Positions 7,055 to 47,913 of a stretch of 64,000 bases of DNA are shown piece by piece. The stretch is taken from positions 124,001 to 188,000 of the IMG/VR virus record IMGVR_UViG_3300032334_002567; one strand, written 5' to 3'. Position 1 is the stretch's first letter, and each line of letters begins with the position of its first letter. Position numbers and translations under genes: made by a program. Below the pieces are notes generated by a model. That model searched no databases, was not told where the DNA came from, and saw only the letters and a list, made by a program, of their open reading frames with translations.

Positions 7055-7082
7055 TTTACAAGTGATTTTTTTGTGCTATACT
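7055..7082 (+). promoter_or_regulatory. sigma70-like promoter for tmRNA
   Basis: TTTACA-N16-TATACT with TGn extended -10, 12 nt before the tmRNA 5' end. Confidence 0.7.
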
Positions 7083-7094
7083 CATTTATTGTTA

Positions 7095-7444
7095 GGGGTC
7101 GCACTGGTATCGACGTAGTACAAGGAGATATTGGTGGCACGCCGAGGTTGATCGAAAGGCCTCGTAAAAATTCGATCACGTCTTAACTGACGAAGTTTCT
7201 TACGCAATGGCTGCCTGAGAAGGCAACCACAAACTTAGGAAGCCACGCAAGAAGCGTCCAAAAGTTTGTCGCAAAATCTTGCTGGTTTCAATTGGTCAAC
7301 TTAGTTGAAACGAGATTAATAGGTTGAAAAGATTCTTAGACTTTTGTTCGTTGTAGTCGAAAGAATCTTATGAACAACGAAACAAGCGTGTAGAGGCCAT
7401 ATTGAGTTTGCTTACGGACAGGGGTTCGACTCCCCTCGACTCCA
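7095..7444 (+). ncRNA. ssrA: tmRNA, tag peptide (A)DEVSYAMAA
   Basis: Acceptor stem GGGGTCG/CGACTCC with G3.U; T arm AGGGG-TTCGACT-CCCCT; pk1-like region then TAACT resume context; tag frame 7189-7218 ends MAA-TGA; 3' end reads CTA, so CCA is not encoded. Confidence 0.95.
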
Positions 7445-7446
7445 CT

Positions 7447-7482
7447 AAAAGGAGGACTACGAAAGTGGTCCTCCTTTTTTTT
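7447..7482 (+). terminator. rho-independent terminator after tmRNA
   Basis: AAAAGGAGGACTAC-GAAA-GTGGTCCTCCTTTT followed by a T run. Confidence 0.85.
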
Positions 7483-8316: not shown

Positions 8317-8388
8317 TGCGAGGTAGCATAACGGTAATGCAGCAAACTGTTAATTTGTAAAATGTCAGTTCGACTCTGACCTTCGCAG
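8317..8388 (+). tRNA. tRNA-Asn(GTT)
   Basis: Acceptor TGCGAGG/CTTCGCA; anticodon arm GCAAA-CTGTTAA-TTTGT; T arm GTCAG-TTCGACT-CTGAC; no encoded CCA. Confidence 0.92.
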
Positions 8389-9794: not shown

Positions 9795-9865
9795 GCGGAA
9801 ATAGTTTAATGGTAGAACTACCGTCTCCAAAGCGGTTGGTGAGGGTTCGATTCCTTCTTTCCGTG
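9795..9865 (+). tRNA. tRNA-Trp(CCA)
   Basis: Acceptor GCGGAAA/TTTCCGT; anticodon arm ACCGT-CTCCAAA-GCGGT; T arm GAGGG-TTCGATT-CCTTC. Confidence 0.92.
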
Positions 9866-9997
9866 CTTTTGGTGATTTTCCTGAGCGGTCAAAAATCACT
9901 CACTACTTTTAAAACACAGGTTAAAAGGAGAAAAAGAAAAAACAAAAAAGTTTTAATCTCTATATAATATAGGTTCTTTTACATGGAGGTTTAGATC

Positions 9998-45483: not shown

Positions 45484-45747
45484 GTGATAAACAACGATTT
45501 GACAAAAAAGGCGATTAAAGAAAACATCCCTATAGCTGAATTAGAGTATCTTGGTCTTCCTTTAAGGGTAATTAATGCCTTGGAAGATTCTAAGCACAAC
45601 TTAATTTATATAAAGGACTTAGTTTCTTTAAATGAGAAACAGATTTCTTCAATAGAGAACTTGGGTTCTTCTGGGGTGAAACAAATTGTTGCTGCTTTAG
45701 AAAAGTTAGGTGATTTGGATAAAGAAATAGCAAGATGGCACAGATAA
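45484..45747 (+). CDS. stand-alone RNA polymerase alpha-CTD-like protein
   Basis: IPIAEL..GLPLRVINALE...IYIKDLV...IENLGSSGVKQI..AL. Confidence 0.8.
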   Translation: MINNDLTKKAIKENIPIAELEYLGLPLRVINALEDSKHNLIYIKDLVSLNEKQISSIENLGSSGVKQIVAALEKLGDLDKEIARWHR

Positions 45748-46756: not shown

Positions 46757-46784
46757 TTTACAAGTCAAAACCTAGTGCTATACT
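46757..46784 (+). promoter_or_regulatory. sigma70-like promoter nearly identical to the tmRNA promoter
   Basis: TTTACAAGT-N9-GTGCTATACT in both. Confidence 0.7.
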
Positions 46785-46794
46785 AATTTTTGTA

Positions 46795-46924
46795 GGAAGT
46801 ATTAAGAAGGTGCCGAAAGGCACTGGCAACCGAGCAAAAGCCACGGTGCCACCAGCTATCTTTGCTGGGATACGCACAGGAGTGTTTCCTGTGAAAAAGC
46901 GGATTATCCGCCTTCTTGATCTCC
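46795..46924 (+). ncRNA. putative structured ncRNA or 5' leader (unassigned)
   Basis: ATTAAGAAGG/CCTTCTTGAT closing stem enclosing five GC-rich hairpins. Confidence 0.65.
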
Positions 46925-46946
46925 CTTTAACAGAGAGAGAGTAACC

Positions 46947-47153
46947 ATGTTTTTTAGTGCTGCTGTTTTACAAGGACTCAACGATCTTAGGAATAAGAAC
47001 CCTAAGATTGTAGAGGTAACCAAAGAAGAGCTAATTGCTTCTATGAAAAGGCAAGGCTCTGCTGATTGGGAAATAAATATGACTTTGTCTTTCTTGAAAG
47101 GAGGTGCTGCATTAGGCGGTTCCAATGGAGAAAGAATTGTCTTAAAAGAGTAA
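46947..47153 (+). CDS. hypothetical protein
   Basis: 68-aa ORF directly after the structured RNA. Confidence 0.5.
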   Translation: MFFSAAVLQGLNDLRNKNPKIVEVTKEELIASMKRQGSADWEINMTLSFLKGGAALGGSNGERIVLKE

Positions 47154-47165
47154 GATAAAAAGATG

Positions 47166-47202
47166 ATAAACCGGGAGAGGACAACCAACTCTCCCGGTTT
47201 AT
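47166..47202. terminator. perfect 14-bp hairpin
   Basis: ATAAACCGGGAGAG-N9-CTCTCCCGGTTTAT. Confidence 0.7.
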
Positions 47203-47291
47203 AAAACCATATGACGCTAACAAGATATCAACAGAAGTACCGAGTGAACCAAAAGCAAAGATTTAACATCACCACCGAGTGAACCATAAAA

Positions 47292-47615: not shown

Positions 47616-47643
47616 TTTACAAACTGTTTTGTTGTGGTACAAT
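47616..47643 (+). promoter_or_regulatory. sigma70-like promoter
   Basis: TTTACA-N16-TACAAT with TGn extension. Confidence 0.65.
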
Positions 47644-47661: not shown

Positions 47662-47913
47662 ATGCAAGCGTCGAGATACTTTTTTGTTTTTGAATACGGA
47701 TTCGGTAGTTTTGGAGCAGCAGCAGATACCGTACAAGAAGCTAGAGAAGTTTTTCGCAAACGTATGAATGGAGAACTGGAATTATCATGTGGATTTCCAA
47801 AAGAAGAAAACTGGAAAAAACTAGCTAGACAGCAAAGACATCTTGAGAGATTCAAAAATTCTGGTTTAGATATTGACTTAATTGAACCTGCGGTTTATTC
47901 TGAACAAAAATAA
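47662..47913 (+). CDS. hypothetical protein
   Basis: GGAGG RBS before MQASRY. Confidence 0.55.
   Translation: MQASRYFFVFEYGFGSFGAAADTVQEAREVFRKRMNGELELSCGFPKEENWKKLARQQRHLERFKNSGLDIDLIEPAVYSEQK

What the first reader, a model, noticed from the sequence alone, without database searches (positions are those of the whole stretch)
46757..46924. GC-rich five-hairpin RNA behind a promoter almost identical to the tmRNA promoter
Seen: promoter TTTACAAGT-N9-GTGCTATACT, the same as at 7055. A 10-bp closing stem ATTAAGAAGG/CCTTCTTGAT (46801/46911) encloses TGCC-GAAA-GGCA (GNRA loop), TGGCA.CCG/CGGTGCCA, CCAGC/GCTGG, CACAGGA/TCCTGTG and CGGA/TCCG. Almost every base is paired, and GC content is visibly above background. 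An alternative fold CAC-AGGA-GTG would expose a CsrA-type site. It does not match the tRNA, SRP, or lysine/cobalamin riboswitch cores I know. Inference: a novel stable RNA or a regulatory leader for the 68-aa ORF at 46947.
Basis: partly seen in the sequence, partly recalled or inferred. Interest (0 to 1): 0.72.

Follow-up and report, generated by a model that had tools for sequence, protein, structure and literature searches.

The report
SAM riboswitch in a jumbo phage
The "five-hairpin RNA" is a member of a known riboswitch class, SAM-I/IV, which senses S-adenosylmethionine; the unusual part is that it sits in a 381-kb phage genome in front of a tiny protein of unknown function rather than a SAM-metabolism gene.

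Summary
The promoter match, the hairpins, the long closing stem and the raised G+C content are all present. The RNA is not novel: window 46794-46909 matches Rfam RF01725 (SAM-I/IV riboswitch aptamer) over the full model at 52.2 bits (gathering score 41.1). The SAM-I and SAM-IV models do not match.

The window belongs to a 381,443-bp IMG/VR virus record (a jumbo phage). Seven other distinct copies of the same riboswitch were found in related freshwater phage contigs. They sit behind the same type of promoter and carry compensatory changes in P2, P3 and P5.

It therefore cannot coexist with the SAM-binding fold. I read it as the ligand-free alternative helix of the expression platform.

Most likely mechanism (inferred, not shown): SAM locks P1. 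This frees a pyrimidine tract (46920-46928), which pairs with the purine-rich ribosome-binding tract (46932-46940) and shuts off translation of the 68-aa ORF.

The regulated proteins are orphans. They are the 68-aa protein, whose model has a winged-helix-like topology, and in most relatives an extra ~100-aa helical protein. No RNA-seq run could be listed.

Verdict: a known RNA class in a new and moderately interesting phage context.

The parts
46757..46784 (+). Sigma-70-type promoter with extended -10: -35 TTTACA at 46757-46762, TG at 46776-46777, -10 TATACT at 46779-46784. The predicted start is about 46791.
   Evidence: The same promoter type (TTTACA, 16-17 nt, TGnTAnAAT) lies at the same distance upstream of the riboswitch in L002, L011, L012, L044 and L049.
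46794..46909 (+). SAM-I/IV riboswitch aptamer (Rfam RF01725), full-length match.
   Evidence: 52.2 bits against a gathering score of 41.1; E = 1.2e-5 for the window and 1.6e-8 for the genome. SAM-I and SAM-IV models give no match at E <= 10 in the phage genome.
46799..46873 (+). P1 helix: 46799-46803 pairs with 46869-46873 (5 bp, the last a U-G pair). It encloses J1/2 (AAGA, 46804-46807), P2, P3 and P4.
   Evidence: Rfam alignment and constrained fold. 100% of cells pair in 8 sequences; U-G in the window is C-G in the 7 relatives.
46808..46824 (+). P2: a plain hairpin with no internal loop. A46808-U46824, G46809 bulged, 46810-46814 with 46819-46823, GAAA loop.
   Evidence: One compensatory C-G to U-A change in L049. 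The loop stays GNRA (GCAA in L002).
46825..46850 (+). P3 with the conserved asymmetric internal loops (AA 46828-46829; U46847) that line the SAM pocket in this clan. The distal stem is short, with an AAAA loop at 46836-46839.
   Evidence: The distal stem varies in length and sequence among relatives but stays paired; pair 47-68 of alignment A3 is G-C in 4 sequences and A-U in 3.
46852..46868 (+). P4 hairpin (46852-46856 with 46864-46868), inserted between P3 and the 3' strand of P1.
   Evidence: Treated as an insertion by the Rfam model. 97.5% paired in 8 sequences, with no covariation. SAM-I/IV is described as having a P4 helix (PMC6890682).
46875..46893 (+). 3' hairpin outside P1 (46875-46881 with 46887-46893). 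This is the hairpin that distinguishes SAM-IV and SAM-I/IV architecture from SAM-I.
   Evidence: Two positions show compensatory changes in 3 of 8 sequences.
46899..46911 (+). Extra hairpin P6 (46899-46903 with 46907-46911, loop UUA). It overlaps the 3' tail of the Rfam model.
   Evidence: The stem is invariant in relatives and the loop varies. A strain variant A46903G keeps the pair as G-U. The consensus scan flags it as a weak terminator-like site.
46791..46809 (+). 5' strand of the long-range alternative helix (purine-rich leader, P1 5' strand, J1/2 and base of P2).
   Evidence: It overlaps P1 and J1/2, so it excludes the SAM-bound fold.
46912..46932 (+). 3' strand of the long-range alternative helix (pyrimidine-rich). 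It contains the proposed anti-SD tract, 46920-46928.
   Evidence: In relatives the inner 6 bp are invariant, two pairs form only in the window, and the outer part has a different sequence on both strands yet can still pair.
46932..46941 (+). Purine tract (AG repeats), the probable Shine-Dalgarno region, 5 nt before the AUG. In the P1-forced fold it pairs with 46920-46928 (4+4 bp).
   Evidence: Other genes of the window use AAGG, AGGA or GGAG at this distance. Relatives have AAGAAAGG here.
46947..47153 (+). Regulated ORF, 68 aa. Orphan family with a predicted alpha1-beta1-alpha2-alpha3-beta2-beta3 (winged-helix-like) topology.
   Evidence: 9 homologues at 72-93% identity; pLDDT 76; 16 representatives at E <= 1e-3. 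No Pfam or PHROG family and no structural match.
47166..47202 (+). Terminator hairpin ending the one-gene unit (14-bp stem).
   Evidence: -24.4 kcal/mol, z = -6.7. A different hairpin sits at the same place in L009.

Best explanation
This is a phage-encoded SAM-I/IV riboswitch that controls the 68-aa ORF at 46947-47153.

A strong sigma-70-type promoter (46757-46784) starts the transcript at about 46791. Nucleotides 46799-46893 fold into the S-adenosylmethionine aptamer: P1, J1/2, P2, P3, P4 and the 3' hairpin.

Without SAM, the pyrimidine-rich segment 46912-46932 invades the aptamer. It pairs with the leader, the 5' strand of P1 and J1/2.

With SAM bound, P1 and J1/2 are held in the aptamer. 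The tract 46920-46928 is released and pairs with 46932-40, so translation of the ORF goes down. That makes it an OFF switch.

Shown: family membership by covariance model, conservation and covariation of the aptamer helices, mutual exclusivity of the two folds, and gene linkage. Inferred: SAM binding, the direction of the switch, and action at translation.
For: (1) Family match. RF01725 matches at full length, 52.2 bits against a gathering score of 41.1. It is the only match in the 381-kb genome.

(2) Core sequence, read directly. The clan's conserved core is present: tandem A-U/U-A pairs in P1, J1/2 AAGA, the CAACC ... A-GGUG internal loops of P3, and a P2 without an internal loop. That last feature defines this variant (Weinberg 2010 supplement).

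(3) Comparative support. Eight distinct copies exist (alignment A3). 97.8% of 269 cells pair, and 5 pairs (11 cells) change on both sides. Sliding the partners by 1-3 columns drops pairing to 29-47% and removes all compensatory changes.

(4) Purifying selection. A strain relative has 1 substitution in 46791-46946, and it preserves a pair. It has 4 substitutions in the first 44 nt of the ORF.

(5) Position. The promoter is conserved directly upstream, there is no strong terminator before the ORF, and a strong one follows it.

(6) The two folds. The long-range helix and P1/J1/2 share nucleotides 46799-46809. Without ligand, the long-range fold is 5.1 kcal/mol more stable than the P1-forced fold (-61.1 against -56.0). 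That gap is of the order a tight ligand could plausibly bridge.

(7) Accessibility. With the leader folded up to the AUG, the SD window is 0.80 unpaired without P1 and 0.30 with P1 forced. The direction is the same in all six relatives (0.18-0.46 against 0.04-0.28).

(8) Two different solutions. The window and its relatives use different sequences for leader, anti-SD and SD (AGGAAG / CUCCCUUU / AGAGAGAG against GGACAGG / CCUGCCUUU / AAGAAAGG) but keep the same three-way pairing logic.
Against: No ligand-binding or expression data exist, and no RNA-seq run could be listed.

Formal covariation for the long-range helix is nil. Its inner 6 pairs never vary, and 2 pairs form only in the window. Support for its outer part rests on just two lineages.

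When 12-28 nt of coding sequence are included, the U-run after the AUG pairs with the purine tract in silico. The predicted accessibility difference then vanishes for the window (0.29-0.27 against 0.35-0.31).

In several relatives a short SD hairpin forms in both states and is only lengthened in the P1-forced state. The predicted effect there is modest.

The PK-2 pseudoknot of SAM-IV and SAM-I/IV could not be identified.

The regulated genes have no recognisable link to SAM, except that in L044 a SET-domain methyltransferase is co-transcribed.
Confidence: 0.68

Rival explanations
1. The same SAM-I/IV aptamer is present, but it acts on transcription. The P6 hairpin (46899-46911) followed by the U-rich CUUCUUGAU acts as a weak intrinsic terminator or pause/Rho entry site in the SAM-bound state. 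This releases a ~125-nt RNA, which would look like a stable small RNA.
For: The consensus scan lists 46899-46911 plus its tail as a terminator-like site. In the ligand-free fold the tail is sequestered in the long-range helix.
Against: The stem is only 5 bp with a 3-nt loop. The tail is poor (4 U in the first 6 nt, and CUUCUAAAU in relatives). P6 forms in both states, so there is no obvious antiterminator. The anti-SD/SD complementarity is conserved in two different sequence solutions, which a terminator model does not need.
Confidence: 0.12
2. The element is a riboswitch-derived structure that no longer responds to SAM. It could be a constitutive structured leader locked in the long-range fold, or an aptamer retuned to another ligand such as SAH or a phage-made SAM analogue.
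For: The long-range fold is predicted to be more stable than the aptamer fold in the window, more so than in some relatives. The score of 52 bits is lower than for canonical copies in other viral contigs (66-74 bits). The target genes are not SAM genes.
Against: All core positions of the family are kept and are invariant across eight phage copies, while neighbouring coding DNA drifts. A decayed aptamer would not be under such constraint. The lower score comes mainly from insertions (P4, long P3) that the model penalises.
Confidence: 0.12
3. One reading: a novel stand-alone stable RNA unrelated to known families, co-regulated with tmRNA through a shared promoter.
For: The promoter is identical to the tmRNA promoter. 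The fold is compact and very stable.
Against: It matches RF01725 over the whole model. The transcript has no terminator before the ORF. The shared promoter is one instance of a general consensus seen 5 times in the window and upstream of the riboswitch in relatives.
Confidence: 0.03

Closest known systems
SAM-I/IV riboswitch (Rfam RF01725; 'SAM-I/SAM-IV variant' of Weinberg et al. 2010, PMC2864571)
   Same: Full-length covariance-model match. SAM-I-like core (P1, J1/2 AAGA, P3 internal loops). P2 without a kink-turn or internal loop. A hairpin 3' of P1. Found mostly in aquatic metagenomes.
   Different: It is encoded by a jumbo phage and precedes orphan small proteins rather than methionine or SAM genes. 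It carries a P4 insertion, a very short P3 tip and an additional P6 hairpin in the 3' tail. The PK-2 partner of the P3 loop is not recognisable.
SAM-I (RF00162) and SAM-IV (RF00634) riboswitches, same clan CL00012
   Same: Same ligand-binding core logic. P4 lies between P3 and P1 as in SAM-I. There is a 3' hairpin after P1 as in SAM-IV.
   Different: Neither model matches anywhere in the phage genome at E <= 10. P2 lacks the kink-turn or internal loop and the PK-1 pseudoknot that these classes have.
Phage-encoded glutamine (glnA RNA) riboswitches of marine myophages (e.g. OM43 phage Melnitz, PMC9004378)
   Same: A metabolite riboswitch carried by a large aquatic phage that also encodes a tmRNA, apparently regulating the phage's own genes rather than a host-type metabolic gene.
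   Different: Different ligand and fold. In Melnitz the riboswitch is associated with the tmRNA gene itself. Here the tmRNA (7095-7447) only shares the promoter sequence, and the riboswitch is 39 kb away.

Membership tests
SAM-I/IV riboswitch (RF01725) | Covariance-model score at or above the curated gathering score, over the full model | tested here: met
   52.2 bits against 41.1, model positions 1-99 of 99. Relatives score 44.7-47.2 bits.
SAM-I/IV riboswitch (RF01725) | SAM-I-type core: P1 with tandem A-U/U-A pairs, J1/2 AAGA, P3 with the CAACC and A-GGUG internal loops | tested here: met
   Read from the alignment. These positions are invariant in all 8 phage copies.
SAM-I/IV riboswitch (RF01725) | P2 is a plain stem without the internal loop or kink-turn of SAM-I and SAM-IV (definition: Weinberg 2010 supplement) | tested here: met
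   P2 is one A-U pair, one bulged G, 5 bp and a GNRA tetraloop.
SAM-I/IV riboswitch (RF01725) | Hairpin located 3' of P1 | tested here: met
   46875-46893. Two compensatory positions among 8 sequences.
SAM-I/IV riboswitch (RF01725) | PK-2 pseudoknot between the P3 loop and the 3' tail (shown for SAM-IV in PMC6890682; for SAM-I/IV from my own recollection of the env87 crystal structure paper, which is not held here) | tested here: inconclusive
   The P3 loop differs in every lineage (AAAA, UACG, UUAGA, CAGA, UCAACAG). Only 2-4 nt of possible pairing with the P6 loop were seen by eye. There are too few sequences to test.
SAM-I/IV riboswitch (RF01725) | Helices supported by covariation in homologues | tested here: met
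   97.8% of cells paired, 5 pairs with double-sided changes, and none when partners are slid. Caveat: only 8 closely related sequences.
SAM-I/IV riboswitch (RF01725) | Selective binding of S-adenosylmethionine | not testable with these tools
   Needs in-line probing, ITC or a reporter assay.
SAM-I/IV riboswitch (RF01725) | Usual genomic context: 5' UTR of methionine or SAM metabolism genes (typical, not strictly defining) | tested here: not met
   Downstream genes are a 68-aa orphan, a ~100-aa orphan 'X', and in L044 a SET-domain methyltransferase. By contrast, IMG/VR contig L123 has SAM-I/IV plus SAM-V before metK.
SAM-I riboswitch (RF00162) | Covariance-model match; kink-turn in P2 with the PK-1 pseudoknot | tested here: not met
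   No match at E <= 10 in the phage genome. P2 has no internal loop.
SAM-IV riboswitch (RF00634) | Covariance-model match; P2a/P2b with internal loop; no P4 | tested here: not met
   No match at E <= 10. A P4 hairpin is present and P2 is undivided.

The most novel reading that the evidence does not exclude
The phage uses the host cell's SAM level as a signal for its own programme. When SAM is low, for example in a starved host or after SAM depletion by defence or counter-defence activity, the riboswitch turns on a small winged-helix-like DNA-binding protein, plus protein X in relatives. That protein would act on the GAGTGAACCA / GATTTTACAT boxes. These boxes lie just downstream of its gene and form a ~15-unit, 35-nt-period array next to an AAA+ initiator-like gene elsewhere in the genome. 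This would couple SAM status to phage replication or transcription. It would be the first riboswitch-controlled regulatory circuit of a phage keyed to SAM.
Probability: 0.1. Interest if true: 0.7.

Novelty: new member of a known kind. Interest (0 to 1): 0.4.

Why it matters
Riboswitches are described as rare in phages (PMC9004378). In five full-text searches I found no report of a SAM riboswitch that regulates phage-specific genes.

SAM matters in phage-host conflict. Restriction-modification and related defence systems depend on it, and some phages degrade it (own knowledge).

A phage that measures SAM and adjusts an orphan, possibly DNA-binding, protein would open a concrete question: what does a phage do differently at high and low SAM?

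Practically, the riboswitch assigns a testable condition of expression to two orphan protein families. It also gives a compact natural SAM-I/IV variant, with P4, a minimal P3 tip and an extra P6, for structural comparison.

The RNA class itself is well known. Most of the value therefore lies in the context, not in the fold.

Tried and rejected
- Pattern scans for more copies. Four patterns derived from this riboswitch were scanned. In viral contigs, two gave nothing and one gave 4 chance hits without P2 complementarity. The same pattern in metagenome contigs gave 24 chance hits. The genome-contig scan found only one partial candidate, at the edge of the fetched locus in a Planctomycetota MAG contig, which was not informative.
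- Relatives of the 68-aa protein in IMG/VR. None were found. The wider alignment was too divergent to search with. There is no match for the RNA or the protein in GenBank phages.
- Function of the two regulated proteins. There is no Pfam or PHROG family. There is no significant Foldseek match for either model. The Atlas look-alikes (winged-helix domains of MCM and RPA) score below 0.9 and are leads only.
- Transcription evidence. No RNA run could be listed. The DNA runs gave only strain variants.
- Protein-DNA complex prediction for the 68-aa protein on the repeated box. The job was not folded by the tool and is no evidence either way.
- Ensemble SD accessibility with coding sequence included. 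There was no clear difference for the window. I therefore treat the translational model as likely, not shown.
- Formal covariation of the long-range helix. There is none.
- The structure paper for SAM-I/IV (env87) is not held. PK-2 details rest on PMC6890682 and on memory.

Full report
**What is in the sequence**

The region was read directly. The promoter-like string at 46757-46784 is identical, in all 19 specified positions, to the one at 7055-7082. That second copy lies 13 nt upstream of a tmRNA gene (7095-7447, RF00023, 133.7 bits). The pattern occurs only at these two places, with 0.01 matches expected from shuffles.

It is a good sigma-70-type site with an extended -10. A looser version (TTTACA, 13-16 nt, TGnTAnnnT) occurs 5 times in the window against 0.48 expected. 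The identity therefore reflects a strong consensus used by this genome, not a special tie to tmRNA.

G+C is 0.485 in the element against 0.31-0.41 around it.

**What it is**

A scan of the whole window against Rfam 15 finds four RNAs: the tmRNA, two tRNAs, and at 46794-46909 the SAM-I/IV riboswitch aptamer RF01725. The riboswitch hit is full length at 52.2 bits, against a gathering score of 41.1. The hit is repeated in a local scan and in a search of the whole genome, where it is the only copy. The models of the two sister classes, SAM-I and SAM-IV, give no match at E <= 10.

- TGCC-GAAA-GGCA is P2.
- TGGCA.CCG/CGGTGCCA is P3, with its two conserved internal loops.
- CCAGC/GCTGG is a P4 insertion between P3 and the 3' strand of P1.
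- CACAGGA/TCCTGTG is the hairpin that follows P1 in this class.
- CGGA/TCCG is an extra hairpin (P6) in the 3' tail.

It is 46799-46803 pairing with 46869-46873.

The defining difference of this class from SAM-I and SAM-IV is a P2 without an internal loop (Weinberg et al. 2010, PMC2864571, supplement). That feature is present here. SAM-I/IV is also described as having a P4 helix and lacking PK-1 (PMC6890682), which fits.

**Where it is**

The window is bases 124,001-188,000 of a 381,443-bp IMG/VR virus record, with CheckV completeness 79%. This is a jumbo phage. The window also carries phage-typical content: tmRNA, tRNA-Asn and tRNA-Trp, DNA ligase-like ORFs and many small ORFs. DNA runs that hold the sequence are lake and freshwater metagenomes.

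**Relatives**

The 68-aa ORF has nine homologues at 72-93% identity in metagenomes, and a wider family of ~70-aa proteins. Fetching their contigs and scanning them gave eight distinct copies of the riboswitch in all: the window, L002, L011, L012, L013, L044, L045 and L049.

The gene arrangements are:
- In the window and L011 the riboswitch directly precedes the 68-aa gene.
- In L002, L012, L013, L045 and L049 it precedes an extra 93-110-aa gene ('X', a four-helix model, no known family), which is followed within a few bases by the 68-aa gene.
- In L044 it precedes a 160-aa X whose stop overlaps the start of a SET-domain methyltransferase gene.
- In L006-L010 and L014 the 68-aa gene has no riboswitch. 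L009 keeps a 9-codon remnant of X.

X is absent from the window's genome, and its SET gene lies 34 kb away. The promoter type is conserved at the same distance upstream.

**Support for the structure**

On the alignment of the eight copies (A3), the aptamer structure has 97.8% of 269 cells paired. Five pairs change on both sides: one in P2, two in P3 and two in the 3' hairpin. No shuffle reaches the observed covariation score. Sliding the 3' partners by 1-3 columns drops pairing to 29-47% and removes every compensatory change.

The sequences are close relatives, so this is supportive rather than strong evidence by itself. The main evidence for the fold is the Rfam model match.

A strain relative in another run has one substitution in the 156 nt of leader, A46903G, which keeps a P6 pair as G-U. 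It has four substitutions in the first 44 nt of the ORF. This points to tighter constraint on the RNA than on the coding sequence.

**How it probably works**

It cannot coexist with the ligand-binding fold.

Folding the leader up to the AUG gives -61.1 kcal/mol for this long-range fold and -56.0 kcal/mol when P1 is forced and J1/2 is kept single-stranded. In the forced state, the released pyrimidine tract 46920-46928 pairs with the purine tract 46932-46940, 5 nt upstream of the AUG.

The predicted unpaired probability of the SD window is 0.80 without P1 and 0.30 with P1. The six relatives with a complete leader go the same way (0.18-0.46 against 0.04-0.28). The relatives use different sequences for leader, anti-SD and SD but the same three-way logic. 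In them, the extended anti-SD:SD helix shares nucleotides with the outer part of the long-range helix.

Genes of this phage use SD-like AAGG, AGGA or GGAG motifs, so SD sequestration is a plausible control point.

My best reading is a translational OFF switch. The aptamer is transcribed about 40 nt before its competitor strand, SAM locks P1, and the anti-SD then closes the ribosome-binding site.

**Caveats on the mechanism**

- The inner long-range pairs never vary, and two of them exist only in the window, so covariation says nothing about them.
- With 12-28 nt of ORF included, the U-run after the AUG pairs with the purine tract in silico, and the difference disappears for the window.
- In some relatives a short SD hairpin exists in both states.
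- A weak terminator-like site at P6 keeps a transcriptional mechanism possible.
- No RNA data could be listed.

**What it regulates**

The 68-aa protein is conserved. It models with moderate confidence (pLDDT 76) as alpha1-beta1-alpha2-alpha3-beta2-beta3, the order of elements of a winged helix. No structural match is significant. The language-model look-alikes (winged-helix domains of MCM and RPA) are below the level at which they count as more than a lead. X is all-helical and equally orphan.

None of these is a methionine or SAM gene. The only link to SAM is the co-transcribed SET-domain gene in L044 and a SET gene 1-3 kb upstream in L002, L045, L048 and L049.

**Comparison and novelty**

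What is new is the setting.

Phage riboswitches are described as rare. The known aquatic examples are glutamine riboswitches (PMC9004378). My literature searches found no SAM riboswitch regulating phage-specific genes; this is absence in the searched library, not proof.

A crude pattern scan shows that canonical SAM-I/IV copies do occur in other IMG/VR contigs:
- L061 has one before small unknown ORFs.
- L123 has one in tandem with SAM-V before metK.
- L076 has one on a contig that also carries a bacterial SRP RNA and is probably cellular DNA.

The class is therefore not unique to this phage lineage among sequences labelled viral. I rate the finding as a new member of a known kind, of moderate interest.

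Noticed in passing
window 47238-47287; also G000:C1 ~273,566-274,120 (L174:1188-1740): A 35-nt unit (GAGTGAACCA, 8 nt, GATTT(T)AACAT, 6-7 nt) lies just after the 68-aa gene's terminator; the 11-mer CCGAGTGAACC occurs at 47240 and 47275. It recurs 60-200 nt downstream of the 68-aa gene in relatives, including L009/L010, which lack the riboswitch. In the phage's own genome the same unit forms a tandem array of about 15 copies right after a 361-aa AAA+ initiator-like ORF. It could be an iteron-like or operator array, possibly the target of the winged-helix-like 68-aa protein.
   Followed up: partly
window 7055-7447: The phage encodes a one-piece tmRNA (RF00023, 133.7 bits) behind the same promoter sequence. 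ARAGORN did not report it, although Rfam did. tRNA-Asn (8317-8388) and tRNA-Trp (9795-9866) follow.
   Followed up: no
window 45484-45747 (+): An 87-aa ORF matches the C-terminal domain of the bacterial RNA polymerase alpha subunit (PF03118, E = 1.2e-8). A free-standing alpha-CTD in a phage could be a transcription decoy or adaptor.
   Followed up: no
L044:2841-3881: In one relative the same riboswitch controls a 160-aa X protein whose stop codon overlaps the start of a SET-domain methyltransferase gene. This is the only direct link between this riboswitch lineage and a SAM-using enzyme.
   Followed up: partly
L123:541-793 and 768-2072; L061:11362-11467; L076:2120-2221: Other IMG/VR contigs carry canonical SAM-I/IV riboswitches (66-74 bits). 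L123 has SAM-I/IV and SAM-V in tandem before a metK gene. L061 has one before small unknown ORFs. L076 also carries a bacterial SRP RNA and is probably cellular DNA.
   Followed up: partly
window 46931-46946: Strain variants in other metagenomes insert AG after 46931 (lengthening the AG-repeat SD tract) and A after 46946. The purine tract therefore varies in length between strains.
   Followed up: no
window 47616-47643 (+): A third promoter of the same type (TTTACA, 16 nt, TG-extended TACAAT) lies inside or after the 102-aa ORF, ahead of the ORF that ends at 47913.
   Followed up: no
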